Positions 3,561 through 64,000 of a DNA stretch of 64,000 nt are shown here, piece by piece. The notes beneath the pieces are model-generated. The model saw nothing but the letters and a program-made list of their open reading frames with translations, had not been told where the DNA came from and ran no database searches. Position 1 is the stretch's first letter. Each line of letters opens with the position of its first letter. A program made the position numbers and the translations under genes. Source of the DNA: Marsupella aquatica (taxonomy: Eukaryota > Plantae > Marchantiophyta); the NCBI GenBank assembly GCA_973895155.1, contig OZ316899.1, positions 6,451,241 to 6,515,240 on the forward strand, read 5' to 3'.

Positions 3561-5354
3561 CAAGTTGTGGAACTCGACTACCTTAACACTTAGCTCTGGC
3601 ATTGTTGACTCTGACGCCAAGCTCCCTTATGGTCCAGGCCCGGATAGGCCATTCGGGGAGGACTTAGCATGGGGAGACTTTTGGGCAATGGGACGTGGCG
3701 CTCGCGAAGGCAAGGCGCCAGGCTAGTGTCACGCAATTAGGACTTAGACTAGTTGAGGACTGGTCGGGTTGAGGGAAAAGGGTCAGGCTCAAGGTCGACC
3801 ATCCAGACCCCCAACGGACTTTGATTTTTGAGGGCTTGAGTGAGAACTCCTCTTGGGCCCAAGGCCAATGGAGTTGACTTCATGGGCAACGGACGCTTGG
3901 GGCGCGAGTCATGGCCCAATCTAGGTTTGGCCAATTTGGGGCCCTGAGTGGCGATGAGGTCTGAGGGCCCAAGCATAAGCACTGGGTTGGCCCGATCACA
4001 ATGGGCTAAGGCACTCCGCTTGCAAACGCCTAACTAGGAAGTTATGGGCGTTGCCAGTTGGTGGCGCGCCCTGACATGCGGGATGGGGTCCAGGTTGGGG
4101 GCCAAAAGTTTGGGGACCAAAGTTGGTCTGGGGTTGGCAGGTCTCTAGAAACATATATTAGGGGAGTGGTGTCTCCCTAGGGGCTAAGAGCGAGCCGAAG
4201 TTGTGAGCCGCGGTGGTCGCGATACTAAGGGAAAATGTCAAATGGAAACGACAATAACTTCCCAACGAGAAGTCCGTTGGGGGACTTCTTGGGTGCATTG
4301 GAAATCTCTCAAGGAGGGCTACATCCTCCTGAGCTCATCTGGGTCTGGAGGCGCCATAGGTTCTTGAGGTTTGTGGGTGTTGTCTTGGCTGCTTGGCGAA
4401 TCCCGTCAAAATAGCAGCCAAGCCGCATTCAGTCTCTCAAGGAAGCTTGCATTGGGGAGGCAAGGCCAAGTAGGCATGGAGGTTGAGTTCCAAGGGCACT
4501 TGGCCCATAGGCCATCAGTGGGGCAAGAACTGGGAGTTGGTTGCTAAAGTCGGGGCCATTCTGGTCCCGGCATGTAGGGACAAGCTTTAGGACAAGCTAC
4601 GCTATTTGGGCCATGAGCATATCTTGGGGATAGGGCGATCAGTTGATGATGGATAGATACAAGGCGGAACCCGGGCTGCGCCCAAGGATGGAGCTGTTCT
4701 AGACAAATAGTGGGCATCGGTTCTGGTTCCGGCTTATGGCATCGAGAGGACCTATCGCTGACCTACTTACCAAATGTCTATTGAGCTTGAGTTAGGATGC
4801 TAGACTTGAGAGATCTAGATCCTAAAGGGTTACTTACCAAGACACTTGGGTGCTTGTGCAGACAATGAGGACCATTGAGTAGTGATCGTGTTGGGGAGCA
4901 AGTACGGCTTTGTATGGGAGGGGCCGATGGCGGTGCAAGGGGCATCAGATTGCTTGCTCAAGGTATTCCGTGGAGGCATTTGGGCACCAGGGGCACTTAG
5001 GCGTGGGTGCTGGGATTGGTGAGGGCACGGGGTGGCAAGGTCCACCACTCCTTGGTACCGTGCGAACAATAGGGTGGGACTTCTCGTGATCTTTTCCTTG
5101 CAACGGAGACTCATAGGACCGGACAACAAGGGAAGGAGAGACACGGGGAGGAGGGAGATAGAGAGAGAAGGAGATAGAGAGAGGAGGAGGAGTAGTGGCA
5201 AGAGGCATTCCACTAGGGTACCTTGTAGCACTCAAACAACTAGAAGCAAGGCTGCATTGGAGCCAAATAGTAGTACCTCAAAGTAGGATGACCAGAGGTA
5301 CAAGTTGCGCCGACAAGGTGGACAGTCAGGATGTGATAGGCCCCAATCTTAGCA
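3561..5354 (+). mobile_element. Solo LTR of the chromovirus family whose 3' LTR lies at 38923-40740
   Basis: Colinear similarity from 3561 (CAAGTTGTGGAACTCGACTACCTTAAC) to ~5051 (AGGTCCACCACTC) with 38925-40740. The putative CA end at 5354 is inferred. Confidence 0.75.
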
Positions 5355-7630
5355 GCATCAGGTTGTACCTCTTGATTAATCCTACAACCTAATGACTCTT
5401 AATTGTCCCAAACATTGTGTTGTGGTACGTTTGCCAATGTACGTCCGCATATAGATTCAAATTACATTGTGATTAACTAGGTAGACCTTACCATACATCG
5501 TAGCATGCGTCACACTTAACCCACTAATTTACAACGTATCCGTTATACGTTGTTTCCCACATGGCTAATTATCGGGTCTTAAATTTGGTTAAATGTTCTT
5601 ACATTGTATTCAACTACGTAAATTGGTCATGTTTTCACAATTTTGGTTAAGTGTAACATAGAATGTGACATCGTAAATTGTAAAATGTTGAAGTTCGCTT
5701 TGATATAACGTCGACTAAGGCGACATACCCAACCTTATACGTTGTTTGGGACTTTTCAACATGTCGTCTGAACTTTGCATTTATTGTCTTCTGATATTAC
5801 ATTAATCAGGCAGAAAATGTAGTTGTGACCCACATCAAAGCATGTTGCAAGTAAGAGCAAAAGGGAGAAGCCGCACAAGAATCTACCAGTCAAAGACTTG
5901 TGTCTTCCTATGTTGGACAACAATCAGGATGTTGGACTCGTGGTGGGGATCATGCGCAGCGGTATTGCCCTGATCATAGAGGGCCAAGAGGGGCCTCAAC
6001 ACCTGATCAGCGACAGTGTGATCATTGTGGAGCTCTTGGACACACCAAGGATAGGTGTTTCTGACTCCATCCTGAGCTACGGAGAGGAGGACAGCGCACA
6101 CATGATCAGGGAAGAGGAGGTAGAGGTGGTGGTCGTGGCCAAGGTATGCTACATGCAGGGAGATAGGGAGGTGATGTTGCTCCTATTGTAACCACAAATC
6201 CTAAGGATGCTAAGATTTCTCAATTGGAGCAACAACTAGTTGCTATTGTTAGTTCTCAGGTGAGACCTGCTTCTACTGATGCAGCTTCTACATCCTATGG
6301 AGCTTCCACATCTTATGGGGTTGATGGAGATCTTGCCACCATGGGATTCATGTGTGACACTGCACACATTGATGCATCAGCAACTTTGATGTGTGAGGTA
6401 GCAAAATCTCTTGAGCCCCAAGGAGCAATAGTGGAGCTAGATCCATAGAGGGGGATGCACGTTGTCAAACAAAGCTTCCTTAGTTTTTTACATTGTCAGA
6501 GACAGTTTCAACTGCCATTATGAACCCAATTCAAACAACCCTAGTGTGGGCAAGTTGGCAAAATCATATGATGTTGTAGCAGGGATGACAAGTACCTTGT
6601 TGGGGGCAGCTACCACCATAGTGCGCACCCTATTATTTTCAACGATAGATATGTTGACATTGGGAGTTAGTCCAACTGATGTGTTCAGATTGGCAGCCAC
6701 ATTATGCAAGGATACTCCAATTTTGGCTTCTCATGCAGAGGCAACATGCAATTTTGAAGCAGCAGAGTTGATACCACCTATTGCTATTTGTAAGACATGG
6801 CATGCAACAGCAGCAAAGTTGATGGATTTGTCAGCACGCCCTGCATTTGAGAGGCTAGGTTTGTGTCATTGGTATCTTTAGATTACTTGGGCCTATTGGA
6901 GCAGTATACTAGCCAAAGAGAGTGTTACCAGATATTGGTGCTCAACCCTTGATGTTGGGTAAGTCTGCCATACAAGGATTGGGATTGCATCCAAATGATC
7001 TAGAGGAGTGTCCCATTCCTCTTCAAACTTCATTGGGGGACCTACACCCTTACAGCACGTCACCAGACGACCACTTGACTTGAGGATTCAGGAGGGTCAT
7101 GCAAAGGATAGCTCCCACATGTAGGCGCAAGCTATTATGACTAAGGCAAAGTCCTATGATGTGTTGGTGGGATGTATAGTGTTGTACCCCATGGGATTTA
7201 TTCTTGATTTTTGGGATGAATCAATTTCATAGTGGCTTATTGGCAATCAAGAGATGCTAGATTGAGCAGATTTCCAGTGCAATTTAGTGGACCTTTGGGA
7301 GGCCCTAAATCTACACCATTGTCTTTGGTAGCATTCAGTGGTGTGATCACTGATCCTAATGATTTGATGGAAGGTAATGCACATGCAGCAAATGTTCCAA
7401 TAGTGGAGGAGTCACATGAGGAGTAGGTCATGCATGGGTTACCTGTTGGTAGTGTTGCGTCACCTATGTGGGGCACAAGATAGGCCTTGCCACAGACAGC
7501 AGCACGATTGGTACATGATGCATGGCATCATACTTTTACACCACAACCAGGAGCAGAGCAGTCTCCTACAGGTGGGCCAGTGACTCTTTCACCATTGGCT
7601 ACCACCACTATTGCATGGCAGTATCTATTA

Positions 7631-8580
7631 GAGGGTATTTGTTTGTTGGATTTATTTGGTGAAATTAGCATTGGATTGGCTGTTGTTCTTTAGGCAGGAA
7701 TTCCTGTGCGTCGCACCTGGTATGTGGAGATAGATGAGATAGCATGGAGAGTCTCATTGCGCCATGTGGCTATGTTGGTGGGTCGTTATCCACAATTATT
7801 GTTAGTGGATGTTGTTCTTGGCTATCAGCATGCACTGCCTATTGATATTTCATTGTTGGGTGTGGATCATTTGGATTGTGTTGGCCCCATTGATTTGGTG
7901 ATTGTTGGTTGGCCATGTTAGGGCCACTCTAGAGCTGAAGTTGGACATGGACTTCATGATCCACAATCTGCATTATTTTGGGAGATGTTACGGGTGTTGC
8001 GTCATCTCCAATTGCATCAGACACAGTCTCCAACCTACATTTTGGAGAATGTGCCACTCTTGGGTGATCATTGTCAGCGGATTGTTGTCAGCGTTCATTA
8101 GGTGAGGTCCTAGATTGGACTTGTTGTGTTATTGGATGTTGCATGTATGGGTTCTCGTGCACATCGTCCACGCTCGTGGTGGACTAATTTGTTACCAGGT
8201 GAGGTGTTAAAGCGAGCATTTGACAACATTCCTTGCTTGCCAACCTTGGTAGTGGATGATATTTTGGATCCAAGGCATTGTTCTCAGGGTGTGATCTAGT
8301 TTGACGGATCTCCATTGGCAATGGTCAATGTGGTTGGGCGCCCACATTGTGCATTACCCACTTTTGTGAGCCACTATGCTTCATATGCTTTTAACGCATG
8401 TGGCCCTGGACTTGTGTGGGATACAACTCTACAATAGTTAGTCGAGCCCACTGCTGATGAGATAGAGTGGGCTATGGGATTCTCCACAAGTACAACTGCT
8501 GCTACATTTGTGTCAGACAGTTCACGCCCCCAGGTCCTTGACCAAGCCATGGATTTGAATTGTTTGACTTGGATTGTCAG
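7631..8580 (+). pseudogene. DNMT3-like C5-cytosine DNA methyltransferase domain embedded in Gypsy pol
   Basis: One frame read through TAG stops gives: LLDLFGEISIGL (motif I), YVEIDE (II), PIDISL (III), PIDLVIVGWPC*GHS (IV, catalytic PC at 7913-7918), LFWEMLRVL (V), YILENV (VI, ENV at 8045), LDVACMGSRAHRPRSWWTNL (VIII), EPTADEIEWAMGF (IX), RPQVLDQAM (X). Same frame as RT ORFs 8855 and 9209. Confidence 0.88.
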
Positions 8581-11500
8581 CTTGGGAGTAGCAAAGCAGT
8601 TTTGGATGTGCTCTGCTGGTGTTCTAGATCGTCCATTGGTGAGCTTGCGGCCTATTGAGAGAGTAGTGGCCACAGCTGGGGGCAAGCAAATAGTCCATGG
8701 ACCTATGGCAGGATTGGCCAAGGCTGGACAGATTGTTGAGCAAGAAGGGACTGCTCAAACTATTGTTAAATAGCAATCATCGGCTATCTCTTCTACCCTA
8801 CAAAAATATATTAGGGATTTGGTGGAGAGTTGGGAGCCATAGATTGGTCCTAAGTTGACAAGGGAGGAGAGACGTTGCATGCATCAATTCCTAAAGAGTT
8901 ATTGGGATTGTTTTGCATTTAGCATGAAGGATTTGGGGACATTAAAGGGCCCTAGTATTCATATTGAATTGGCTAGTGACGTACCAATCTTTCATAGACC
9001 ATACCATAACAATGACATGGAGAGAGCTTTGATTTGGAGTAGAACTCAGGATTTGCTGGAGGCAAGTTTGGTGGAGATCTCATACAGGGAGTATGCATCT
9101 ACCACAATCATGCCAGCCAAGAAGGATGTGCATGGCAATTACACGAATAGGCGCATGTGTGGTGATTACCGACCTATTAATCGTCAGACAAAATCTGATT
9201 GATATGCCATGCCCACACCTAAGGAGATCTTTCATACTATGGGGCATGCAAAGGTTTCTAATTCATTGGATCTGAGGGCAGGGTACCATCAGCTTCCAAT
9301 CAGACATTTTGACAAGTCCAAAACAACATTATGGGGAATTGCTTTGCATAGCAAGGATCGTTTGTATCAGTGGTTGTTCTTACCATTTGGGTTGAAGAAT
9401 GCACCAGCAGAATTCTAGAGTCATGGATCAAATTCTTGTAGGTTTGGATTTTGTCAGATGTTACATTGATGATATTTTGGTCTATTCTTCCAATGTGGAA
9501 GAACATCAGCAACACTTGCAGATTGTGTTGGAGAGATTGAGAGAACATGGGTTGAAACTCCATCCTGGAAAGTGTAAGTTCTTCCAAGACCAGATTGAGT
9601 ATTTGGGCCACACTATCTACCTAGGAGAATTGGGTGTGCAACAGACTAAGGTGGAGGCCATTACATAGATTCCTCGCTCTACTGATGTGAGTAGAGTTCA
9701 TGCATTCTTGGGATTGGCGAGCTACTATAGGAGGTATTTTAAAGGATTTTATTAGCCAGCTTGCTAAACCTTTAATTTTACTCACTAAGTTGGATCAAGA
9801 GTGGATTTGGGGTGATGACCAGGAGCATGTCTTTTAGGAGTTGAAAAAAAGATTGGGGTCATCCCCTATTTTGAGAAGACCCATTTCAGCTACACACTGA
9901 TTGGAGTGGAGTAGGACTTGGAGCAATGCTGACTCAGAAGGATGATGAGTTTGTTGTGGCTTATGCTAGTAGATCAAACAATTCAATAGATGCTATGTAT
10001 AGCTCTTATGAGAGAGTGTTTGGCAGTAGTGACACACTTCTGTTGCTACTTGTTTGGTAACCCCTTCACCTTGATCACTGATCATCAGCCTCTCAAGTGG
10101 TTAACGGAGTCCGACAAGCTTACAGGGAAGCTTGCACAATGGGCATTGTTGTTACAAGAGTATGATTTCCAGGTTGTGCATAGGCCTGGAAAAGTGAACT
10201 TGGATGCAGATGGATTGAGCCGCAATCCATGTACCAGTCAAGAGGATGAGACTAGAGCCAGATGACATGATGAGTTAGATAAGGAGATGGTGTCAGAATG
10301 ACATGCATCTACCTTCCTTTGTTGGGTTCCAGCATGCAGTGGATCTGTGGACTTTACTTCATTGGATGAAGATGACGAGTCTATAGATATGGATGTTGGT
10401 GAGGTTGTGGTTGGACAACAGGATATTCACAATGATGAGAGAGTGTTGGAATACTTGCGCACTTGTTTTGTTGATGCCAAGGAGTGTGACAGGGTTTTGC
10501 AAAGAGCCACGAGGTTTCAATGGGAAGGAAACCATCTTTTGAGAGTACTACATGATGGTAAGGTATTGGTGGTACCAAAACTATCATAACAAGTACATTT
10601 GGTGCGACATGCACACAAGGAGTTGAGTCACTTTGGTGTGAAGCGCACTTATAGCTTGTTGTAGACACAGTATTGGTGGTGTGGTATGCACACTCATGTT
10701 TGACAACTAATAGCTAAGTGTGTGGTATGTGATATAGTGAGGGCATCATTTAATGCTCCCACTCCCCAATTGCATCAATTGCCGATCATGGGTTTGGGGT
10801 ATAGATGGAGTTTGGACTTTGTTGGTCCATTGCCTCTCACCCAACGGCATAATCGTTATGTTTTGGTTATGGTGGAGCATTTATCCAAGTGGATTGAGCT
10901 AGTGGCGTTGTTAGATAAAGCTAGTGGAGGAGTTGGTGCCACATTTTTGGATCGTGTACTTAGTCATTTTTGGAGCACCAACTGAGGTATTGACTGATCA
11001 AGAAATTGAGTTCCGTGGAGAGTTTGAGAGTTTGTGTGAGCAAGCTCTGATTGATCATCGTACTACTTCTCATGACCATTTTGAGGCAGATGGATTGGCT
11101 GAGAGAGTAGTGGCAAACTGTGAAGAGAGGATTGTGCAAGTATGGGTTGGTCATCTGGGAGATTGGGATCTCTAGTTACCTTGGTTAGTTATGGACTACC
11201 GTTTCAGTTGGCAAACATCACTTACATCCTTCTCACCTTATTTCTTGCTCTATGGTAGAGAGCCAGATTTGCCAGCAACTATTTGTCGTGATACTGCATT
11301 GGTTGTGAACTTGGATAATCTCGATGCTTGGGTCAAGGTTTGTTCGGAGAGGGCAAGGATTTTTGAGAGAGTCATGCCCATGGCCTTTGATAACCTTTCC
11401 ATTGCCCAACATTGTGATACTTTGCGGTATGCCACTATTTTTGGAGGAGGTTATCGTGTGAGGATTCAATAATTTCATCCCAATGATTATGTTTATTTGC

Positions 11501-11706
11501 AGCAGACAGCACCCACTACACTTGATGGGACCGCAAGTCAGACCATTTTATGTGTGCGTGAAGTGCTGCCTTTTGGTGTCCTAATGTTGGAGGGACGTGA
11601 TGGTATGGTTTGGAAGGATCATGTGCGCAATTGTGCACCATGTCATCTTCCAAACATTGACGGTACAGTAGATCCAAGCTTGGCAAATGTTTGTGCTGGC
11701 TTGAAG

Positions 11707-11838
11707 TGTATGTTGTGTTAATCTGCTCAGGGAGCAGCTACGATGTTGATTTGTGATAATTGTTCTAGAGGATGGCACATGTCATGTTTGACACCACCAT
11801 TGCAGGTGATTCCTAGTGGATCATGGTTGTGTTGGTAA
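11707..11838 (+). pseudogene. PHD finger at the integrase C-terminus
   Basis: In frame with ORF 11497..11721: CMLC*SAQGAATMLICDNCSRGWHMSCLTPPLQVIPSGSWLCW*. This is a C4-H-C3 PHD pattern with the last Cys lost. Confidence 0.85.
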
Positions 11839-11875
11839 AGACGCCTAGTTATCATTTGTGTTCTCTTGGAAAACA

Positions 11876-13160
11876 TGGATTGCATGTAGGTGATTGATGG
11901 GGCTCACTTGCACCCAACCTCCTGATCTTCACACCTAAAAAGGTGTATATCAACCTTGTAGAACTCATGGCTAGCTAGAGTTTGGGGACCTTACTCTCAG
12001 CTAGGGGGGCGATTGTGGGTTTTGGACATGTGCGGACATGAGTTACATTTGTCCTTCATTCTTTTATGTGTGTGTGATGTATTGTGCTTAGTTGTGGATG
12101 TATGTGACAAGCAATGTATGTCGTGTAGCAATGTGTATGCGCACGATAACTATCACACCATTCTAGGTAGAATTGTGGTATATTGTACTATCTAGATCCT
12201 TATGTTTAGTATGTGTGCTATATGAGCCGATAAGGTTTTGTTAGATTTGTGTGGGAGAGTAGTTCTCTCGGGGTATTTACAAATGACAAGAAACAGCAAA
12301 CAGTAACAGGAAACAAAAACCGGTAACAGGAAAATGAGTGATAATTTTTTTTGAATTTTTTTTTTTTGAAAAAAAGTTTGTTTTTTTTGCCGAAAACATT
12401 TTTTTGCTAGCGCCCAAAGCTAGCCAAAAAATGTTGTCGGCAATTTTTTTGTTGGAAAATGTGATTTTGTAGGAAATATGTTTACATTGTCATTTTTCTG
12501 GTAACAGTGAATTTTTGCTGGTACCAGTAAACCTGTTTCTTGTTTACTGTCACGCATGTCATACCCGTTCTCTCTTGTGAGGCATCGAAAGGTTATCTTT
12601 CAATGTTGAGCCTTGGAGAGAGGAGCTCGTGTTGTGGCTATGGTGGTCAGAGCTCCTTCTATGTAGCATGGATTGCAAGTAGGTGGTTGATGGGGCTCAC
12701 TTGCACCCGACCTCCTGATCTTCACACCTACAAAGGTGTATATCAACCTTGTAGAACTCATGGCTAGCTAGAGTTTGGGGACCTTACTCCTAGCTAGGGG
12801 AGCGATTGTGGGTTTTGGACATGTGCGGACATGAGTTACATTTGTCCTTCATTCTTTTATGTGTGTGTGATGTATTGTGCTTAGTTGTGGATGTATGTGA
12901 CAAGCAATGTATGTCGTGTAACAATGTAAATGTGCACGATAACTATCACAGCATTCTAGGTAGTATTGTGGTATATGTACTATCTAGATCCTTATGTTTA
13001 GTATGTGTGCTATATGAGCCAATAAGGTTTTGTTAGATTTGTGTGGGAGAGTAGTTCTCTCTTGTGAGGCATTGAAAGGTTATCTTTCAATGTTGAGCGT
13101 TGGAGAGAGGAGCTTGTGTTGTGGCTATGGTGGCCGGAGCTCCTTCTATGTAGCGTGGAT
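11876..13160 (+). repeat. Tandem duplication of 3' UTR + PPT + LTR start (copies from ~11876 and ~12667); a third partial LTR repeat at ~13271-13400
   Basis: Near-identical ORFs 12013..12195 and 12806..13036; direct sequence match. Confidence 0.85.
12270..12566. mobile_element. MITE with 8-bp TSD (GTTCTCTC) inserted in the LTR
   Basis: TSD at 12262-12269 and 12567-12574. Termini GGGGTAT...ATACCC with imperfect longer inverted repeats. The empty site is visible in the duplicate LTR copy at ~13050-13065. Confidence 0.85.
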
Positions 13161-14710
13161 TCCTTGAGTGCAAGGTGCGTTGGCTTGACATATGTGTGTG
13201 ATCAGATCGGACGTGATTGAGTGCGTATTGTTGGCGTTGATTGTGGTTTGTTTGGATTGAGATTATTAGGGGTTTTGGACATGTGTGGCATGAGTTCCAT
13301 TTGTCCTTCATTCTCTTATGTGTGTGTGATGTATTGTGCTTAGTTGTGGATGTATGTGACAAGTGATATATGTTGTGTGGCGATGTGTATGCGCACGACA
13401 CATCTATTTTGAATATTGCATTATTAGATGGGACAGAGTGATAGATCTTGATCACATATCCAGATACAAATTCCAAATAGTTAATGTATTCATGATTCCA
13501 TGCATTGAATAGTCATAGATCATGTCCAAAAAGCATTCCATTCATACAAAGCTATATAGAAATTCAGGAAACCCAATCTCTTCCTATGGCAGATTGCTAT
13601 TTATATCATCCTGCTTTGAAATTTGTTTTGGTGCTATTAGACGTAAGCCAGATGAACAGAGTTTGTTCATGTTAAGATGACCCACAACGATAGTACTCAG
13701 GTGGTGAGTCCACACCATGAAGCATAGACCATCCGCTTTTCTTGGGAACCAACAGACGATATTGGTTCAAGCCCCAATGTCTTTGTTCAATCCCCGCCAT
13801 TGGGGTGAAGTCAATCATTGCAGCACTTGATTTCTAATCCCATGTTTTTGCAGCAATTGTCCAGACGGTTGTGGGGAGACATGGGCCAAAAGAAGGCTAG
13901 CTATTGCATCCAAGATTTTTTTATGTGATATTCGTAGATTATTGCCTAAGAAATCAGCGTAAAGCAAAGAACATATGCATCAAGAAATAAAAGATATCTA
14001 GCACCTGATCTGGGTTATCCATGTGCATAGTCTCAGGTGATAGGGTGGTCCAGGATTGGATACACTTGCACGGCCCCGCAACACTCCCTTGATTCTCCCT
14101 TGCTCCTCTAGCTTGTCAACTTCCCCATGTCCCAAGTAGCATGTCAGTCTCGACACTGTGCCTTGTCAATTTCTGGGGATTTCACCGTGCTTTGTGTGGT
14201 GATATGTATGGAGGCGTTCAGTCTTTAGCAAAGGTGTCATTGCTGGTGGCTCAGATGCTTTTGGGCCCATTTTAGGTTTGCTTCTACCATTGAGTCCACA
14301 AACGGTTGTGATGTTCCAGATCTTATTGTCATCTTTGTTCTATTTCTTAGTGACTAGAGAGCCCCATGTGTTGTATAATATAGTATGGTACATGGCCTGT
14401 ATATACAATGCTGTAGTCATAGGCTAAAAATTTTCCTTGACATTTTTATGACCTAGGAAGTTATGGTCGCTACAAACCTGACCTTTCATTTCTTGTGTAT
14501 TCTCCCCATATTCTTATGAGAGAGAGAGAGGGAGGGATAGGTCCAATAGAGGGAGGGAGAGGGAGAGGAGGCGGAATGATGACACTAGGGGTCCTACACA
14601 CACTACAATGACTAGGCTAGTGACTAGTGGCAGTGGTGTGACATCGGCAGATACGTTGTCCCTAACTAGAACTAGCTCAAAGCAGGATGACACACAGTAC
14701 AAGTTGTGCC

Positions 14711-14916
14711 TGAGAGGCGTACAACCCAGTTCCATATGCAGGTCTAGACGCAATACCATCCCCATACCATCCAGTCTCAACGTCACTAGGGTTTATCCAA
14801 ACTCCATCCTGCATGAGAGGCGTACAACCCAGTTCCATATGCAGGTCTAGACGCAATACCATCCCCATACCATCCAGTCTCAACGTCACTAGGGTTTATC
14901 CAAACTCCATCCTGCA
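14711..14916. repeat. Perfect 103-bp tandem duplication
   Basis: TGAGAGGCGTACAACCCAG...CATCCTGCA at 14711-14813 and 14814-14916. Confidence 0.9.
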
Positions 14917-35934: not shown

Positions 35935-38900
35935 TGGCCTAGTAAGAGTCCTGCACTATTGGTGTCCAAAAAGGATGATACTTTGAGATTGTGCGCAGAT
36001 TATTAGGCCCTCAATAAGCAGACGATAAAGAACAAGTACGCATTACCTCATATGGATGACCTCTTTGATTGCCTCTCCGGGACTAAGAAGTTCTCAAAGG
36101 TGGACTTGCGGTATGGGTATTACCAGATCCGCATGACTAAGGGAGACAAGTATAAGACTGCGATGCGCACAAGGTTCGGATCCTATGAATTTTTGGTTAT
36201 GCCGTTTGGGTTGTGTAATGCAACTGCTATGTTCATGAAGATGATGAATATCATCTTTCATGACTTGTTGGACCAAGGAGTGGTCATCTTTATTGACGGC
36301 ATCCTAATCTACTCAAAAACTTTGGAGGAACATGAGCAGTTGCTCAGAGAAGTGTTCTCTCGCCTTCGTAAGGCTTGTCTCTTTGCTAAACCTAGCAAGT
36401 GCAAGTTTGCAATGAAGTAGATTCAGTTCCTCGGCCATACCTTTACCCCGGAGGGGATAACGCCTAGTCAGGACAAGCTTAAGGAGATCAAAGAATGGGA
36501 GCGCCCGTCCAATGCAAGGCAGGTTAGAGCCTTCTTAGGATTTACGGGGTTTTATCGGAGATACATGAAAGACTACGCAAGGATCGCAAGGCCCCTAAAT
36601 GCGCTAACGTTGAAAAACAAAGTGTTTGTGATTTGGAAAAATGCAAGTGATTACGCCATTGGCAGGCGTCTTCACCAAGATGGGCGTCCTATGGCCTTTG
36701 AGTCATGTAAGTTGGAAAATCATTGGATCACACCGGAAAGAGAAATGTATGCAGTGATCTACGCATTGAAGAAGTGGGAGATTTACCTTAAGAATGGTCC
36801 CAAAGTGGTAATACACATGGAGAGCTCGCCGACTGGGTACTTCAGTTCTAAGCCAAGGCTGAACCCCAAAGAAATGCGCTAGCAGATGTTCTTGGCGGAC
36901 TTTGATTTCAAAGTCCGTCATGTTCCGGGGAAGACAAACATGGCAGCTAACGCATTATTTTTTAAGGACCGTCATCGTGTCAATCGGATCACGATGCTCA
37001 AATCCGAATGGACAAAGGTTCTGGCCGAGGCATAGGAGGATGACAGGTTAGCTAAGGAATGGCAAAGCAATGGGGGTAGCCAAGGCAAGGTAAGGCACAT
37101 TTCATTGGGGTTGGATACGACACATAATGTCCAGTTTTGGCGATACAAGGAGAGGCGTGTGTACATCCAAGAGTCTCTAAGGTTAGAGGTTCTGCAAAAG
37201 TACCACGACTCACCCTGGGGAGGGCATGGAGGACAAGCGGCTATGTATCGCAGCATGTTTCTCGTGTGCATGAAGCAATCAGTCCTTCGCCACGTGCAAA
37301 GTTGTTACTCGTGCCAAAAGAACCAACCGATCTATAGGGCAAAAGGAGGACTTTTGCAACCCTTATCGGTAGACGCGGCTCCATGGAAGTCCATCTCCAT
37401 GGACTTCATTGTTGGGTTACCTGAGTCCCACGGCAGTAACTTCATCTTAACAATTGTGGATCATTTTTCCAAGATGACGTATTTCTTGCCAACTACAAAA
37501 ATGGTTTCAGCACGAGAGGTTGCCGGTCTAGTGTTTGACAATGTCTTCCGACAATGGGGTTTGCTGTTGCATATCCTATCCAACCACGATACCAAGTTCA
37601 CGGGCCATTTCTGGAAGGCATTGTTCCGGTTATCTGGAATGGACCTTACTAGGGGATCAGCGTATCATCATGAGACTGATGGCCAAATGGAACGGGTGAA
37701 TGGTATCGTGGAGGACTACTTGCATCACTTTGTGACGGCCAATCAAAAGGATTGGGCAAAGCACTTAACAATGGTCGAGTTTAGATATAACTTGACCAAG
37801 CATTCGGCGATGGGGTTTGCGCCGTTTGTGTTGGCCACAGGGAGGATGCCAAGGGTGCCCTCCTGGTTCATAAATCCGACATCTTAGCGGACGGAAAGCA
37901 AGGTTCCTTCTACAAACAATTTTATTTGAGAGTGGCGCCTAGTTGTGGAAGCGGCTACCAAGGGTATGACCCTTGCCCAAAGTTGGTACAAGGAGCAAGG
38001 GGACAAACATCGACGCCAGGTAAGCTTTGAAATTGGGGAGAGCGTCTGGTTGAAGTTGAGACTTGAGCAATACCGCGAGAACATAAGTAGGAAGCTGGCT
38101 CCTAGATATGCGGGGCCCTATTGCATCATACAATGGGCCCACAAGGATAATCCGGTTTTGGTGGTGTTGGAGACACCCAAGGAAATGGGCGTGGGCAAAA
38201 GCTACCATACCATGTTAGCCGGCTCAAGAAATTTGTCAAAGACCATCCCAACCGGGATCAAGTCTTGCGTCCGGACGCCATGCTGGTGGAGGACGTTGAG
38301 GAGTTTGAGGTGGAGGCAATTATGGACCACCGTTACAAACGCAAGTTGGGAAGGCAAATCTTAGAGTATTTGGCAAAACAAGCTGGCTATGATCAGACCG
38401 AGAGTACTTGGGGATCGGAAAAAAATTTGGGTAATGCCTTAGAGATCCTTGGAAGCTATTGTAAGCGAAGTAGCCTACCGCCATTGTGAACTGGTACAGG
38501 CAACTGCAACTACCTTTGTGAGTTGTATACTAGTTCCACTCCTCCCGGCCTCTTGAAAATAAAGTTGGATTGTGTGGGCGCTATAGGTTGTTGGGCGGCC
38601 AATTGCTTTTTGCAAGTGGAAGTTGTTGGTGCCTGCCTCACATCTGTGGGCGGGCTGGTTAAAACCAAAGGGGAGTACCCCAAGGAGAGAACAATGGGTC
38701 CGACAAGTTTGGAGTTAGCTTCCCTGGTTAGATTGGCATCCTACTTGGACAAGTGGGATAGGTTGGAATTTCCTAAGTCTGGAAGGCGCATACCAACCTG
38801 GTTTGCATCAGCCTTATGGGCAAACCATTTGGTACCTCATAAAAATTTTAAGGCCTAAAGTGGTCTACGCGTGCTGGAACATTTACTTAGGTCACGCGGA

Positions 38901-40740
38901 CGTGACCATTTTTAAGGGGGGGTGCAAGTCGCGGAACTTGACTATCTTAACAATTAGCTCCGGCGTTGCTGACTCCAATGTCAAGCTCCCTTATGGTCTG
39001 GACCCGGATAGGCCATCCGGGGAGAACTTAGCATACGGGGACTTGTGGGCAATGGGAAATGGCACTGGCGAAGGCAAGGCGCCAAGCTGGTGACACATAC
39101 TAAGGACTTAGGCTAGCTGAGAGCTGGTTGGGTCAAGGGGAAATGGGCCGGACTCAAGGTCGACCGCCCGGACCCCCGGACGGACTTTGAGTTCTAAGGG
39201 CTTGAGTGAGAGCTCCTCTTGGGCCCAAGGACAATGGAGTTGACGCCATGGGCAACGAACGCTTGGGGCGCAAGTTATGGCCCGATCCGGGTTGGGCCGG
39301 TCGGGGGCCCTGAGCGGCTATGAGACCTGAGGGCCTAGGCATGAGCACCAGGTCGGCCCAATCACAACGGGCTAAGGCACTCCGCTTGCGGACGCCTAAC
39401 GAGAAAGAAATGGGCGTTGCCAGTTGATGGCGCGCCTAGTATGCGCGATAGGATCCGGGTTGGAGGCCAAATGTTTAGGGACCAAAGCTGGTCCGGGGGT
39501 GGCAGGTCTCCAGAAGCATATATGAGGGGAGTGGTGTCTCCCTGGGGGCCAAGGGCGACCCGAAGTCGTGAGCCGCGGCCGGCCGTGACAACTAAGGGAA
39601 AGCGCCAAACGGGAACGACGATATTTTCCCAACGGGAAGTCGGTTGGAGGACTTATTGGGTGCATTGGAAATCTCTCAAGGAGGGCTACGTCCTCCTGAT
39701 CTCAGCTGGATCTGGGGTGCCATGGGTTCTCAAGGTTTGTAGGTGTTAGCTTGCCCGCTTGCCAAATTCTGCCGAAACAGCAGCCAAGCCGCGTTCAATC
39801 TCCCAAGAGAGCTTGCGTTGGGGAGGCAAGGCCAAGTAGGCATGGAGGTTGAGTTCCAAGGGTGCTTGGCCCCTAGACCATCAGTGGGGCGAGAACCGGG
39901 AGTTGGTTGCTAGAGTCGGGGCCATTTGGTCCCTACGTGTTGGGACAAGCTTGAGACAAACTTTAGGACAAGCTACGCTATTTCTCGGGGTCCTCACTTC
40001 TTTTCTTCCGACCCATCACACGCAAATAAGTATAGGGTTTTTTTATTGGATTTAGTGAAATACTTTTAAATTTTTGTTGAAGAACATTAGGGTTATTTTT
40101 ATCCAATTTTGAGAATTATAAGAATCATAGGTTTTTTTAAAATCAAATTTGGGAATATTCTTGGAATATTCCATTAAGTGAAGGGTAAAAAATACTCAAA
40201 AAAACTTTATTGACTTAAGTTTTAGGGTGTTTATTCCCCTAAAACTTCGCGCGTGATATGGGACACCCCTTGGATTGAGGCCCCCGAGCGCTATTTGGGC
40301 CATGAGCATGTCCTGGGGTCAGGGCGGTCAGTTGGTGATGGATAAATAGAAGGGGGAACCCGGGCCGCGCCCAAGGAAGGAGTTGTTTTGGATGAACAGT
40401 GGGCGTGGGTTCTGGTTCCGGCTTATGGCATCGGGAGGACCTATCGCTGACCTATTTTACCAATGTCTATTGAGCTTGAGTTAGGATGCTAAACTTGGTG
40501 AGTTCTAGATCTTGAAGGGTTACTTATCGAAGTGCTTGGTTTCTTGTGCAGACAGTAAGGACTGTTGAGTAGCGGTCGTGTTGGAGAGCAGGTGCGGCTT
40601 CGTATGGGAGGGGCCGCTGGTGGTGCAAGGGGCACTAGGTTGCTTGCTCGAGGTATTCCATGGAGGCGTTCAGGCACTAGGGGCACTTAGGCGTGGGTGC
40701 TGGGATTGGTGAGGGCACTGAATGGCAAGGTCCACCACTC
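35935..40740 (+). mobile_element. Decayed chromovirus (Ty3/Gypsy): RT-RH-INT-chromodomain, PPT and 3' LTR from 38923
   Basis: [37 protein letters not shown]; chromodomain EFEVEAIMDHR...YL...GYDQTESTW; PPT AAGGGGGGG then TG at 38923. Confidence 0.92.
39984..40288. mobile_element. MITE with 13-bp TIRs and 8-bp TSD (CGCTATTT)
   Basis: CTCGGGGTCCTCA...TGAGGCCCCCGAG, with TSD at 39976-39983 and 40289-40296. The empty site is present in the solo LTR at ~4600. Confidence 0.92.
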
Positions 40741-60148: not shown

Positions 60149-63100
60149 TGTGATGCCTAGCCAGGAATCATTAGGCCAGTTTAAATAGTAAAATCAGGAG
60201 TGTACCCTAGGAAACACCTTAGTATATATAGTAACAAAAATAGGGAAAATATAAACAATTAAGGGTGACTATGGAACCCGAGCCGAGGCCGAAAGTAAGG
60301 ACGTCGGGGGAGGGAACACGATTAGGGTTAGGGCGCGCTAAGTACCGGCGGCTATGGGTAACCAACGGGAAGAAAGACCAGCCAGGGGGGTAAGGACCGA
60401 TCGCAAGGAATGGCGGCTCATTTGCAAGCACGAGCCAAGCGGACGACTACGAGAGGCCAACTACTGTCCGTTGCTCAGGCAAGCACTCGGGGTGGAAGCA
60501 GATACCGACAATCAACTCAAGAAGGTATGAGCAACGTCAATCAAGCTGCTCATTTTTGGGGATGCCTGTTAGAACGGGCAACTGAGTAGATTGGGACCTA
60601 CAAGGACGAAGAATCGGAGAGAATGGCTCGAGAATGGCAGGAGCTCGCTTGGCTGTGGGAGCTGCAGAATTCTGCCTTCTTAGGAGGAGAACTCATTACG
60701 GCTGAATTCTTGTGGATGCCTACTGCCGACGAACTCGACGATCTTCTATTTTGTGAGAACAGAATAGTTGGCATCCGGGAGGCCATCAACCGCTGCAACG
60801 ACATACACTGGGAGTTGAAGGATAGCACAGAGGGGTGGATGAAGGCAACCATGCTAGGAGAAACATCCACGGTAGCCGCTATGAAGAGGAAAAGGAACAA
60901 CAATGAAGAAGCCACCCTTGCAAAAAGAACAAGGTCGGCGGCACCCAGGAAACCAGCAAAGCAGGGAAGCAAGAGGCAGGCGAAAGCCGAAGAGGAGGAG
61001 GTACGGTCGACCCCATCAATGTCGTTCCAACAAGAGATGACACCTAGAAAGGCTGGGCGGCGACCCTCCCCGAGGAGGTGCAATTACACTTTGCACGAGA
61101 AGAGGATGCATGCTTTACGGCTATGCAGACTCAAAAATACCAGGGCTTCATGGCCGGATCCGGCTTGGAAGCTTTGTAAAGTTACCATGGCTGAAGCCGG
61201 AGGTGTCAGATTCAAACTTACTAGAATTCATGGGATCATGGGAGCCAGAGACCAATTCCACAAGGGTGTATGGGAAGGATTTCTATCTCACTCCCCGGGT
61301 GATTGCCGAAGTGTTTGGCTTGCCGATGGGCAATAAGACCAAAGTAGATACTAGGAAGACCTTGCCAGACAAGGAGTTCTGGTCGTTTCCAGGGCCATCA
61401 ACAAAGAATGGCTTCTTCCGAAACACTTGCACAAACCCGCACATAGGAGAAATGATCAATTTCTTGCAGGTGACCATGCATTGCAACTTGCCGAGGGCAA
61501 AGATTGGCAAGGCACAGGTCTATCTGGCGGAGAGGCCAGACCGAAGCTGGGACTACAACGGGTACCTCCTCACCCAACTAAAGAAGATCTTGAAGGAGGA
61601 ACAGCTGGTGATCGGCATGGGAAGCGTGTCCCGGCTTGGCTATCATATACCGCTGTTGTGTTGGTATGCCCAAAGTCAGATATTCGCCCCGGTACTTCCC
61701 CTGTAGGCAAGAGCACCAGAGGAGGTTTCCGAACCGAGGCCGACAATAGAGAAACCGACCCAGCCCAACAGTCCTACAATCGAGCAGGTGTTTAGGCCGA
61801 GGAAGGAGGACTTGCCGATGCAACAACCCGGCATGCAGAATCTACTGAAATTGCTGGAGAAGGAAAGGAGAACGGCAACGACAACGGAACTGGTACAAAA
61901 TACTGCTCCCGAAGTTGGCCTTAGCCAACTTACCAGGGGAAACCCCTTTACCAGGGTCAAGGAGAGAAGGAGGCCGGAACACAAGCTGGGAGTCCGAATG
62001 TATGTAGGAGCTTCAAGTCCCAAAGCCGAGGAAAAGCAGCCCAAAGCTCCTGGTCGTGACAGGGAAAAGAAGATATCAACGTGGAAGCCGGAGGAACCAG
62101 GACCCGTGATCTGTGAGGCCGTGTTCACAGCAAGACCAGGACAGCAGCGGGGGGAGCCGGTAGTCCAAGCCGAGGAGGAGGCGGTAGAAGGCTACGACAA
62201 TGATGACTCCGGCTACGGGTCGGACCATCATGTTCCAGGAATAAGGACCTGTGGCAGGTTCATCCCCACGTACGCTTCCAAGAGTAGTTCGAGGGGACCC
62301 GACCCAGCAGAGCAGCCCCGAGTCTCCCCCACCAAATGTTATTCCCCCGAGCTTTGACGGCATAAAACAAACGGCACAGGAATTTCAGGAACGACTCAGG
62401 GAGGAAGAAGAGGACCCTAAACCCTAAACCCTGGCTAGGGAGAAAGATTTACCAGGAGAAGAATGGCCAGAGGACATCAGGTAGCTTGCAGAAAAACAAA
62501 GCAGCCCTCCAGCCACGATAGAAGAAATCCGCAAGGCGGCTTGGGAACAAAGGCCGCGGTGGATGATGCCTATGACTTCTACTCACTCCACCTATGCTAA
62601 AGAACAAGCCATGGAGTATGGGGAGATGTGTGGGGAACTTGCGCTCAGCATCTTTGGGGAGGAGTTGGAGCAGGGACCCTTTTTTCAGAGGGTTTCAGAC
62701 TTTGAACCCACAGCAGAAAGAGTAACAGCTGTGGTGGAATTAAAGCAAAAGTTAGTGGAGGCCCCAGTCATGATAGCACCAGACTGGAACAAGGATTTTC
62801 ATGTCTTCGTAGATGTCTCAGGCTTCTGTATCGGCTCAGTACTAAGTCGGTTAGATGAGAAAGGAAGGGACCATCCCATATACTTTGCAAGCCGCCAGCT
62901 TGCCGATGCCAAACGGAACTACTCCACCACAGAAAGAGAAGCTTTAGGAGTCATTTATTCATGTAAAAAGTTTCGGCATTATTTGCTAGGGTACAAAGTA
63001 ATCTTTCATACTAATCATGAAAGCTTGAAGTACCTAGTAAATAACCCGGACCTTATAGGCAGGGTAGCAAGATGGATTTTGTTATTACAGGAATTTGACT

Positions 63101-64000
63101 ACGAGCAAAAATCAAGTCGGGAAAGCTACACGCCAATGCCGACTTCTTTTCAAGGATCACAGGTAAACCTGCCACAGATTGCATCGATGACGATTTCCCG
63201 ACGAAGAGCTATTTGTTGTGAAAATAGCTGATACATGAGATTTTGCAATTTCTCAGCACGTCCAGATTACAGCCAGGGCTAACCCGAGAACAAGCCGCAG
63301 TCTTTCTGCGGAAGGTCAAACAGCTAGTATCAGTACATTAAGGGTGTGCTACACAGGTATGGAATCAGTGGCACGATTCAAAGGTGTTTGGAGAAGGGAG
63401 AGGTAAACGAGTCTTACGGGCTATGCATGGGGAGGAGGCCGGGAGACATTTTGCTCCAGTAACCACGTCTAAAAAGATATTAAATGCCGGTTACTGGTGG
63501 CCCACCTTGCACAAAGATGTCTATCAGTTTATCAAACAATGCGATCCTTGTCAACGAGCGGGAGGACCAAGGGCGTCCACAAGACATCCTCTGCACCCTA
63601 TTCTACCTCTTGCACCATTTGAGAAGTGGGGTATTGATTTCATGGAACCTCTGAAACCATTGACCCATCCTCGAAGAAACAAGTACATAATCTTGGCCAC
63701 GGATTATGCAACTAAGTGGGTAGAGGCCAGGCCGACGACGAAGGATGATGCAATTACTACGGCTCGATTCATATATGAGCAGATCTTCACCAGGTATGGA
63801 GCACCCCTAGAATTAGTTAGTGATAGAGGAACCCATTTTCTGAATGATATAATTAGTCATTTAAATGAGAGTTAGACATAGACCTACTACTCCTTACCAC
63901 CCAAAGGCAAATGGGTTGACAAAATGAGCCAATGGGATTATAGGAAAAATATTAAACAAGACTGTAGCTCAGAACAAACTCGATTGGGATGATAAATTGT
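60149..64000 (+). mobile_element. Gypsy-like LTR element (accessory ORF + RNaseH + integrase) inserted in the Helitron; runs off the window
   Basis: Begins TGTGATG at the Helitron break; RH FHVFVDVSG...HPIYFASR...NYSTTERE; INT GYWWPTL, CDPCQR, KWGIDFM, LVSDRGTHF. Confidence 0.8.

What the first reader, a model, noticed from the sequence alone, without database searches (positions are those of the whole stretch)
5828..11838. Gypsy retrotransposon encoding its own DNMT3-like cytosine methyltransferase inside pol
Seen: motifs I-VI and VIII-X of a C5-MTase, in canonical order, at 7631-8580. They lie between protease and RT and share the RT reading frame (ORFs 7232, 7487, 7706, 8474, 8855 and 9209 are all one frame, split only by stop codons). 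That argues the MTase is part of the polyprotein rather than a nested insertion. Knowledge: motifs VIII-X (AHRPR-WW-NL, E-E-AMGF, R-QVL-QA) match the DNMT3 de novo family, not the circularly permuted plant DRM, MET1 or CMT. From memory, MTase-carrying retrotransposons have been reported in dinoflagellates and charophyte algae; I do not know of a well-described land-plant example. Inference: the protease-released MTase could methylate the element's cDNA or new insertions, for self-regulation or camouflage. This copy is dead.
Basis: partly seen in the sequence, partly recalled or inferred. Interest (0 to 1): 0.95.

Follow-up and report, generated by a model that had tools for sequence, protein, structure and literature searches.

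The report
Dead liverwort-type Gypsy element carrying DNMT3
This is a long-dead, front-truncated copy of a jumping gene that carries its own DNMT3-like DNA-methylating enzyme; the kind was described in an alga in 2018, and here it has intact relatives in Marchantia and copies in other bryophytes.

Summary
Window 7589-8599 (+ strand) is a complete, unpermuted C5 cytosine methyltransferase domain lying between protease and reverse transcriptase of a Ty3/gypsy element. A profile of six intact relatives matches it at 412 bits, read with X at the stops. It is not a nested insertion. Eleven loci from elsewhere show the same gene order, among them an intact Marchantia polymorpha element with 99%-identical LTRs, two Calypogeia fissa copies and Klebsormidium-type elements.

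The domain is DNMT3-like by profile search (DNMT3A/B/C at 1e-20, DRM at 1e-10, no DNMT1 or CMT) and by fold. In Marchantia it evolves under purifying selection (dN/dS 0.17).

New detail: the stop at 8771 is the family's own ORF1 terminator, not decay. TAG-CAA sits at the same place in all seven other bryophyte-type copies compared (TAA-CAA in one decayed copy), a leaky-stop context. The native layout is therefore gag-PR-DNMT, stop, RT-RNaseH-IN-PHD.

The window copy lacks the gag start and the 5' LTR. It carries about 30 stops and at least 5 frameshifts, and its CpG is heavily depleted.

The kind is known (KnitGypsy-Dnmt3, 2018), and I found no paper describing it in land plants. This scan already found two other copies elsewhere in this genome. 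Catalytic activity and readthrough are inferred, not shown.

The parts
5870..6481 (+). C-terminal part of gag, with a CCHC zinc knuckle at about 6017-6058. The first ~280 codons of gag, the leader and the 5' LTR are missing.
   Evidence: tblastn of Marchantia ORF1 aa 280-478. The CX2CX4HX4C pattern is in piece 5855-6061. No gag N-terminus or 5' UTR/LTR homology lies upstream.
6588..7229 (+). Aspartic protease region, broken by frameshifts (pieces 6913-7080 and 7125-7229 lie in different frames) and stops.
   Evidence: Aligns to Marchantia ORF1 aa 514-738. Weak Asp_protease_2 hit. The colinear PR of relatives passes Pfam.
7241..7588 (+). Linker between protease and MTase, conserved in liverwort-type kin.
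   Evidence: Pieces X and A align at 42-70% aa in L002, L004, L007, L012 and L013.
7589..8599 (+). DNMT3-like C5 cytosine methyltransferase domain, motifs I-X in canonical order, with six in-frame stops. The codon after the catalytic Pro-Cys is a stop, and the second Gly of motif I is replaced.
   Evidence: HMM of intact kin: 412 bits, E 6e-128. The kin profile hits DNMT3A/B/C at 1e-20. Pfam PF00145 E 0.005 on piece 7922-8098.
8600..8770 (+). Variable C-terminal tail of ORF1.
   Evidence: Piece F aligns over its full length to L012. The tail varies in length among kin.
8771..8779 (+). Native ORF1 stop in a leaky-stop context, TAG CAA TCA (the UAG-CAR-YYA type).
   Evidence: The stop and the following CA are invariant in 8 copies within a poorly conserved linker. 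Motif definition from PMC3542737. No difference is listed here in reads of four runs.
8825..9665 (+). Reverse transcriptase; the frame changes near 9416.
   Evidence: RVT_1 at 4e-18 and 1e-5 on pieces. 70% aa identity to Marchantia ORF2.
9875..10262 (+). RNase H.
   Evidence: RT_RNaseH at 2e-13 and RT_RNaseH_2 at 4e-10.
10302..11718 (+). Integrase (zinc-binding, core and C-terminal parts), with stops and a frame change near 10950.
   Evidence: rve at 3e-4. Aligns to Marchantia ORF2 aa 213-1037 at 59-68%.
11722..11838 (+). PHD finger at the integrase C-terminus, then the ORF2 stop (11836-11838).
   Evidence: PF00628 at 1.7e-9. The same domain at the same place occurs in Marchantia, Klebsormidium-type and many metagenome kin.
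11839..13460 (+). 3' non-coding part with about two copies of a 793-bp tandem unit. It probably holds the 3' UTR end and LTR material, but the limits are uncertain because no 5' LTR is left for comparison.
   Evidence: Direct repeats at 94-96%. 11896-12017 resembles the pre-LTR region of Marchantia L008. Kin have similar tandem duplications at the 3' LTR.

Best explanation
Window 5870-11838, plus a 3' non-coding tail to about 13460, is a dead, 5'-truncated copy of a liverwort-clade Ty3/gypsy LTR retrotransposon. The family natively encodes a DNMT3-like C5 cytosine methyltransferase between protease and reverse transcriptase. It is the same kind of element as KnitGypsy-Dnmt3 of Klebsormidium nitens.

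Shown: the native gene layout is ORF1 gag-PR-DNMT, one in-frame stop, then ORF2 RT-RNaseH-IN-PHD in the same frame. The MTase has every catalytic motif in intact kin and evolves under purifying selection. This copy decayed mainly by C-to-T and G-to-A changes, as a heavily methylated sequence would.

Inferred:
- The stop (UAG-CAR-YYA context) is leaky, so most ribosomes make Gag-PR-DNMT and a minority make the full fusion (about 0.6).
- Protease then frees the MTase inside the particle (about 0.5).
- The MTase methylates the newly made cDNA or the new insertion, so the copy arrives already carrying the host's methylation mark (about 0.35-0.4).
- The PHD finger on the integrase reads a histone-tail state to choose insertion sites (about 0.4).
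For: Domain: (412 bits, frame +2, 7589-8599). Intact kin pass the PF00145 cut-off.

Same order gag-PR-DNMT-RT-RH-IN(-PHD) in L001-L004, L006-L008 and L010-L013. Marchantia L007 has ORF1 of 1278 aa and ORF2 of 1045 codons with no internal stop, and LTRs 99% identical.

DNMT3 assignment: profile against PDB gives DNMT3A/B/C 1.5e-20 (75 bits), against NtDRM 2e-10, M.HhaI 6e-10, DRM2 1e-8 and DNMT2 1e-5, with no DNMT1 or CMT. Foldseek ranks 1-48 are all DNMT3.

Kinship with K. nitens KFL_013780020.

Selection: dN/dS is 0.17 for DNMT, against 0.07-0.13 for RT, 0.13 for PR and IN, and 0.32 for gag.

Conserved stop. Motif definition.

Decay: about 30 stops and at least 5 frameshifts. CpG o/e is 0.26, against 0.59-0.74 in intact kin and 0.5-0.6 in the rest of the window. 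Differences from the reads are dominated by T-in-window/C-in-reads (34-40 places, by run) and A/G (34-37), against C/T (8-14) and G/A (8-18).
Against: No enzymatic activity has been shown for any Gypsy-borne DNMT3. The K. nitens domain gave no methylation in yeast, which the authors called inconclusive.

Readthrough is inferred from context and position only. The Marchantia intact copy has TAG CAA CAA, which is not a full CAR-YYA. About half of the DNMT-complete relatives (48 of 94) have no stop at all and fuse DNMT to RT, so the stop is a clade trait, not a requirement.

No RNA run holding this copy was found. No host DNMT3, DRM, MET1 or CMT sequences were in the tree, so 'DNMT3' rests on profile and fold ranking. 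The window's species could not be named.
Confidence: 0.85

Rival explanations
1. One-off capture: a host DNMT3 gene, or a fragment of one, landed inside or next to a single Gypsy copy, so the arrangement is an accident of this locus.
For: Only one copy lies in the 64-kb window. Pfam on the pieces is sub-threshold.
Against: The same order and frame are found in 11 other loci from Marchantia, Calypogeia, Klebsormidium-type and metagenome sources. More than 90 proteins hold the complete domain in a Gypsy context. The domain has no introns and no separate flanking repeats.
Confidence: 0.01
2. The domain is kept by selection but does not methylate DNA. It could methylate RNA (the element's transcript or primer tRNA) or act only as a nucleic-acid-binding or multimerising module of the Gag-PR protein.
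For: KnitGypsy-Dnmt3 gave no DNA methylation in yeast. The domain sits on the Gag-side ORF, where nucleic-acid binders are usual.
Against: All catalytic motifs (FxGxG, PCQ, ENV, RxR) are invariant across kin only 31-47% identical. The best matches by far are the DNA enzymes DNMT3A/B/C, not DNMT2. Human DNMT3B failed in the same yeast assay.
Confidence: 0.15
3. The in-frame stop after the MTase is a true terminator. RT-RH-IN would then be made by another route (internal initiation, a spliced or subgenomic RNA), or these clades rely on RT supplied in trans.
For: Readthrough was not measured. The intact Marchantia copy deviates from CAR-YYA in the second downstream codon. L006 changes frame at this junction.
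Against: ORF2 continues in the same frame with no start codon requirement, and its homology begins 15-25 codons after the stop. TAG-CA is invariant within a variable linker in 8 copies. The Klebsormidium-type clade has TGA-CGG plus a stem-loop 8-9 nt downstream, the classical type II signal.
Confidence: 0.2

Closest known systems
KnitGypsy-Dnmt3 of Klebsormidium nitens (de Mendoza et al. 2018, PMC5890265)
   Same: An LTR Gypsy element with an intronless, unpermuted DNMT3-type domain between protease and RT, under purifying selection. The K. nitens protein KFL_013780020 scores 363 bits on the same domain profile, and its kin have the same gene order and a C-terminal PHD on the integrase.
   Different: The window copy belongs to a separate, well-supported liverwort clade (Marchantia, Calypogeia) at about 30-45% aa identity to the Klebsormidium-type domain. 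The ORF1 stop context is UAG-CAA rather than UGA-CGG plus stem-loop. Marchantia kin have ordinary ~300-bp direct LTRs, whereas the paper describes DIRS-like repeats. The hosts are land plants.
Host DNMT3A/3B/3C de novo methyltransferases
   Same: Best profile and fold match; same motif order; short region between motifs VIII and IX.
   Different: No PWWP or ADD domain. The domain is embedded in a retrotransposon ORF. About 16-20% identity to the mammalian enzymes in structural alignments.
SymbioDIRS-Dnmt3 and SymbioLINE-Dnmt of Symbiodinium (PMC5890265)
   Same: Retrotransposons carrying a C5-MTase. The DIRS-borne one methylates CG de novo in yeast.
   Different: Different retrotransposon classes and an independent acquisition according to the paper. 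No sequence comparison was made here.
Gag-stop-Pol readthrough of gammaretroviruses and the UAG-CAR-YYA signal of tobamoviruses (PMC3542737)
   Same: One in-frame UAG separates an abundant upstream product from a rarer polymerase-containing fusion. The six bases after the stop fit or nearly fit CAR-YYA.
   Different: The boundary lies after protease and MTase, not after gag. Readthrough is untested here.
Chromoviruses and PHD-bearing retrotransposons (PMC6673714, citing Kapitonov & Jurka 2003 and Perez-Alegre 2005)
   Same: A chromatin-reader domain at the integrase C-terminus, thought to steer integration.
   Different: A PHD finger rather than a chromodomain, and combined with an MTase in the same element.

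Membership tests
Ty3/gypsy LTR retrotransposon | pol domain order PR-RT-RNaseH-IN | tested here: met
   Pfam on pieces. Colinear tblastn to Marchantia ORF1 and ORF2.
Ty3/gypsy LTR retrotransposon | Flanking long terminal direct repeats | tested here: not met
   No 5' LTR or gag start in the window; the copy is truncated near 5870. Intact Marchantia kin have 298-bp LTRs at 99% identity.
Ty3/gypsy LTR retrotransposon | gag with a CCHC zinc knuckle | tested here: met
   CX2CX4HX4C at about 6017-6058; the Pfam hit on the piece is weak; kin carry PF00098.
DNMT-bearing Gypsy (KnitGypsy-Dnmt3 kind) | MTase domain within the element's coding frame, between PR and RT, without introns | tested here: met
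   The same holds in 11 other loci.
DNMT-bearing Gypsy (KnitGypsy-Dnmt3 kind) | MTase homologous to that of the K. nitens element | tested here: met
   KFL_013780020 is 53% identical to the L001 protein and scores 363 bits on the shared profile, against 421 for the window. It forms a separate clade in the tree.
DNMT-bearing Gypsy (KnitGypsy-Dnmt3 kind) | Purifying selection on the MTase | tested here: met
   dN/dS 0.17 between two Marchantia copies, in the range of PR, RT and IN. This rests on one pair only. The window copy itself is no longer under selection.
DNMT3 family of C5-MTases | PF00145 catalytic domain above Pfam's cut-off | tested here: inconclusive
   Window pieces reach at best 16.8 bits against a cut-off of 22. 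Intact kin score 29-45 bits.
DNMT3 family of C5-MTases | Motifs I-X in unpermuted order (unlike DRM) | tested here: met
   In the profile search DRM chains match through their C-terminal half only.
DNMT3 family of C5-MTases | Closer to DNMT3 than to DNMT1/MET1, CMT, DRM, DNMT2 or bacterial enzymes | tested here: met
   A margin of 32 bits or more over the next family in the PDB profile search. Foldseek ranks 1-48 are all DNMT3. No phylogeny with host enzymes was built.
DNMT3 family of C5-MTases | N-terminal PWWP and/or ADD reader domains | tested here: not met
   None found by Pfam in ORF1 of kin. The element's only reader domain is the PHD on the integrase.
DNMT3 family of C5-MTases | De novo DNA methylation activity | not testable with these tools
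   The K. nitens domain was inactive in yeast, judged inconclusive.
Programmed stop-codon readthrough, type I | UAG followed by CAR-YYA | tested here: met
   The window, L003 and L013 have TAG CAA TCA; L002 and L008 TAG CAA CCA; L012 TAG CAG TTA. L007 (TAG CAA CAA) and the decayed L004 (TAA CAA CCC) fit in part. Motif from PMC3542737.
Programmed stop-codon readthrough, type I | Measured readthrough product | not testable with these tools
   No expression or ribosome data were available; the runs are contigs only.

The most novel reading that the evidence does not exclude
A single ancient streptophyte lineage of Gypsy elements carries a two-part chromatin kit: a DNMT3-type writer on the Gag-side ORF and a PHD reader on the integrase. 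It sets the writer-to-polymerase ratio by programmed stop-codon readthrough, type I in the bryophyte clade and type II with a stem-loop in the Klebsormidium-type clade. The lineage is still structurally intact in the genetic model Marchantia polymorpha, where the role of a transposon-borne DNA methyltransferase could be tested directly for the first time.
Probability: 0.4. Interest if true: 0.75.

Novelty: new member of a known kind. Interest (0 to 1): 0.5.

Why it matters
Transposons that carry the enzyme hosts use to silence them are a paradox. The one Gypsy example described, in Klebsormidium, could not be shown to be active. This window's copy is only a fossil, but following it leads to the same kind of element in liverworts and a moss, with annotated and apparently intact copies in Marchantia polymorpha. 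Marchantia is a haploid model with methylomes and genetic tools, which makes the function question testable. The conserved leaky-type stop also suggests how much MTase is made relative to RT and IN. For genome annotation, at least 15 Marchantia 'hypothetical protein' models with PF00145 are transposon ORF1s, not host methyltransferases.

Tried and rejected
- Pfam and PDB searches on the stop-free MTase pieces gave only one sub-threshold PF00145 hit and nothing in the PDB. They are uninformative because the pieces are short and decayed.
- Searches for LTRs or inverted repeats around the window copy found none, and there is no gag N-terminus or 5' UTR homology. The copy is therefore truncated, and its 3' limit stays uncertain.
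- No second MTase-bearing copy lies in the window.
- I first suspected that the G>C, T>A skew of the + strand was a decay artefact. Rejected: intact liverwort-clade kin have the same G-rich sense strand.
- dN/dS for the pair L010/L006 failed because synonymous sites are saturated.
- The careful tree did not finish, so I used the quick IQ-TREE. It has no host DNMT3/DRM/MET1/CMT outgroups, because the length and word limits of the protein search returned none.
- The Sphagnum model P0138 did not give a complete domain hit, so it was left out of the tree. It still aligns to window 7271-9232.
- Sequencing-run search gave only coded organisms and no RNA run, so expression was not assessed.
- The window's species could not be named. 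The nearest DNA matches are 72-78% identical.
Full report
**What is in the window.**
- The + strand between about 5870 and 11838 reads as a decayed Ty3/gypsy coding region.
- The parts, in order: the C-terminal part of gag with a CCHC knuckle, an aspartic protease, a ~340-codon C5-MTase domain, RT, RNase H, integrase and a C-terminal PHD finger.
- All MTase motifs lie in one frame (start%3=2), which is also the frame of the first half of RT.
- The stop-free pieces give little on their own. One sub-threshold PF00145 hit (E 0.005, 16.8 bits against a cut-off of 22) and nothing in the PDB.

**Relatives settle the observation.**
- A HMMER scan of 1.84 billion representatives with piece 7694-7918 gave 52 hits. 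The best is a Calypogeia fissa protein at 58% identity. Longer hits combine a retroviral-type protease with PF00145.
- I fetched the DNA of these and later hits and laid the window's pieces on them. The order gag-PR-linker-MTase-RT-RNaseH-IN(-PHD) recurs in every locus that is long enough:
  - two Calypogeia fissa loci (L002, L013);
  - three Marchantia polymorpha loci (L007-L009);
  - a Logan contig (L012);
  - several metagenome contigs (L001, L003, L004, L006, L010, L011).
- A profile built only from six intact relatives (alignment A1) matches the window's frame +2, read with X at each stop, at 412 bits (E 6e-128) over nt 7589-8599. The match has almost no gaps, and nothing else in the 64 kb hits.

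**It is native to the element, not a nested insertion.**
- Marchantia locus L007 (chromosome 4, gene model Mp_4g09160) is structurally intact. It has 298-bp LTRs 99% identical to each other. ORF1 is 1278 aa (gag-PR-MTase), followed by one in-frame stop. ORF2 is 1045 codons in the same frame and carries RVT_1, RNase H, Integrase_H2C2, rve and PHD.
- The window aligns to ORF1 aa 280-1236 and ORF2 aa 15-1037 of that element.
- Protein searches with the MTase region of two relatives returned more than 100 proteins. Among them are at least 15 Marchantia gene models, Calypogeia fissa, Sphagnum fallax BDL97_09G086500 and Klebsormidium nitens KFL_013780020.
- In a quick maximum-likelihood tree of 95 complete domains, the window falls in a fully supported clade with a Logan contig protein (76% identity), Calypogeia and Marchantia. 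The K. nitens sequences form a separate clade. The tree has no host outgroups and is midpoint-rooted.

**Which MTase family.**
- The A1 profile hits DNMT3A, 3B and 3C chains at about 1.5e-20 (75 bits).
- Next come tobacco DRM at 2e-10, M.HhaI at 6e-10, DRM2 at 1e-8 and DNMT2 at 1e-5. No DNMT1 or chromomethylase chain reaches E 1.
- An AlphaFold model of the Marchantia domain (pLDDT 70) finds only DNMT3A/B/C in Foldseek ranks 1-48.
- The motif order is unpermuted, unlike DRM. No PWWP or ADD domain is present.
- The domain is therefore a DNMT3-type catalytic domain without the host enzyme's reader modules.

**Selection.**
- Between two Marchantia copies, dN/dS is 0.17 for the MTase. It is 0.13 for PR, 0.07-0.13 for RT and RNase H, 0.13 for IN-PHD and 0.32 for gag. 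This is a single pair, and one member is partly decayed.
- FxGxG, PCQ, ENV and the RxR motif are invariant across relatives only 31-47% identical to each other.

**A conserved stop between MTase and RT.**
- In the intact copies L003 and L007, one in-frame stop is the only interruption between gag and the end of the integrase region.
- The stop lies 15-30 codons before RT homology begins.
- It aligns with the window's TAG at 8771 and with stops in L002, L004, L008, L012 and L013.
- The contexts are:
  - TAG CAA TCA in the window, L003 and L013;
  - TAG CAA CCA in L002 and L008;
  - TAG CAG TTA in L012;
  - TAG CAA CAA in L007;
  - TAA CAA CCC in the decayed L004.
- In a nucleotide alignment of 69 columns, the first two stop bases and the following CA are invariant, while the surrounding linker is poorly conserved.
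- UAG-CAR-YYA is the type I readthrough signal of tobamoviruses and others (PMC3542737).
- The Klebsormidium-type loci L001 and L011 instead have TGA CGG directly after the MTase. A 13-bp stem-loop starts 8-9 nt downstream and is maintained between the two loci. This is the type II pattern.
- About half of the DNMT-complete relatives (46 of 94) end within 260 aa of the domain. The rest run on into RT without a stop.
- Readthrough itself was not measured. The main text of the 2018 paper does not mention readthrough, frameshift or PHD.

**State of the window copy.**
- It lacks about 280 codons of gag, the leader and the 5' LTR.
- It carries about 30 in-frame stops besides the native one and at least five frame changes.
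- In the MTase, the codon after the catalytic Pro-Cys is a stop and motif I is altered.
- CpG observed/expected is 0.26. It is 0.59-0.74 in intact kin and 0.5-0.6 elsewhere in the window.
- Contigs of four public runs show that the family is high-copy in two coded organisms and occurs in air metagenomes.
- Where those contigs differ from the window, the window mostly has T or A where they have C or G (34-40 and 34-37 places, against 8-14 and 8-18 for the reverse).
- Several stops (7919, 8840, 9666) and frame-change places (7034, 7238, 9416) are private to this copy.
- No difference is listed at 8771-8773, though not all differences were shown.
- This is the pattern expected from deamination of methylated cytosines.
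- The G-rich sense strand is a family trait, not decay.
- After the ORF2 stop come about two copies of a 793-bp tandem unit. Kin have similar duplications around the 3' LTR.

**Mechanism, with what is shown and what is inferred.**
- Shown: the layout, motif conservation, selection and the conserved stop context.
- Inferred: leaky termination gives abundant Gag-PR-MTase and rarer full-length fusion. Protease releases the MTase in the particle. The MTase marks the cDNA or the new insertion. The PHD finger steers integration.
- The 2018 authors proposed self-methylation of cDNA. They showed de novo CG methylation for the Symbiodinium DIRS enzymes but not for the Klebsormidium Gypsy enzyme. Activity of this family is therefore open.

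**Novelty.**
- The kind is known (PMC5890265). A 2025 survey mentions DNMT3 inside retrotransposons 'in streptophytes and dinoflagellates', citing that paper (PMC12344493).
- I found no paper in the held library that describes the element in land plants or names the Marchantia gene models.
- This scan had already noted two other copies in the same genome (s1-327358, s1-327372) and the PHD finger of this copy (s1-751255). I reached Marchantia independently through the protein searches.

**Limits.**
- The species of the window is not known to me.
Read-through was done only with X at the stops, inside scripts.

Noticed in passing
window 3561-5050 and 38925-40740: Two copies of another repeat at 84-87% nt identity, lying directly upstream of the truncated element. 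A 60-nt part is 88-92% like Calypogeia fissa locus L002:12757-12816. It may be an LTR of the other Gypsy family at ~36 kb.
   Followed up: partly
window 35947-36957 and 62716-63839: Remnants of other Gypsy pol genes (RT, RNase H, integrase), only 30-43% aa identical to the MTase-bearing element and without an MTase hit.
   Followed up: partly
window 11874-13460: About two copies of a 793-bp tandem unit right after the element's ORF2 stop. Marchantia L007 (411-bp period around the 3' LTR) and L004 (453 bp) show similar duplications, so this may be a family habit.
   Followed up: partly
window 14707-14912: Two head-to-tail copies of a 103-nt unit at 99% identity.
   Followed up: no
L001:4218-4270 and L011:13844-13896: Klebsormidium-type kin have TGA CGG at the end of the MTase ORF, followed 8-9 nt later by a 13-bp stem-loop that is kept between the two loci. 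This is the look of type II stop-codon readthrough.
   Followed up: partly
L010:1-18357: A metagenome contig holding two and a bit head-to-tail copies (period 8262 bp) of a fused-ORF relative (2358 aa, PR-MTase-RT-RH-IN-PHD in one ORF). It is probably an assembly that cycles through the LTR of a multi-copy element.
   Followed up: no
Marchantia polymorpha gene models (P0078, P0083, P0087, P0095, P0096, P0098, P0124-P0127, P0131, P0132, P0134, P0135, P0161): At least 15 annotated 'hypothetical protein' models carrying PF00145 are ORF1s, or fragments, of this retrotransposon family, not host methyltransferase genes.
   Followed up: partly
window 6800-9700 in runs X5, X7-X9: Short contigs 90-99% like the element occur in air metagenomes, presumably from airborne bryophyte spores or fragments.
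   Followed up: no
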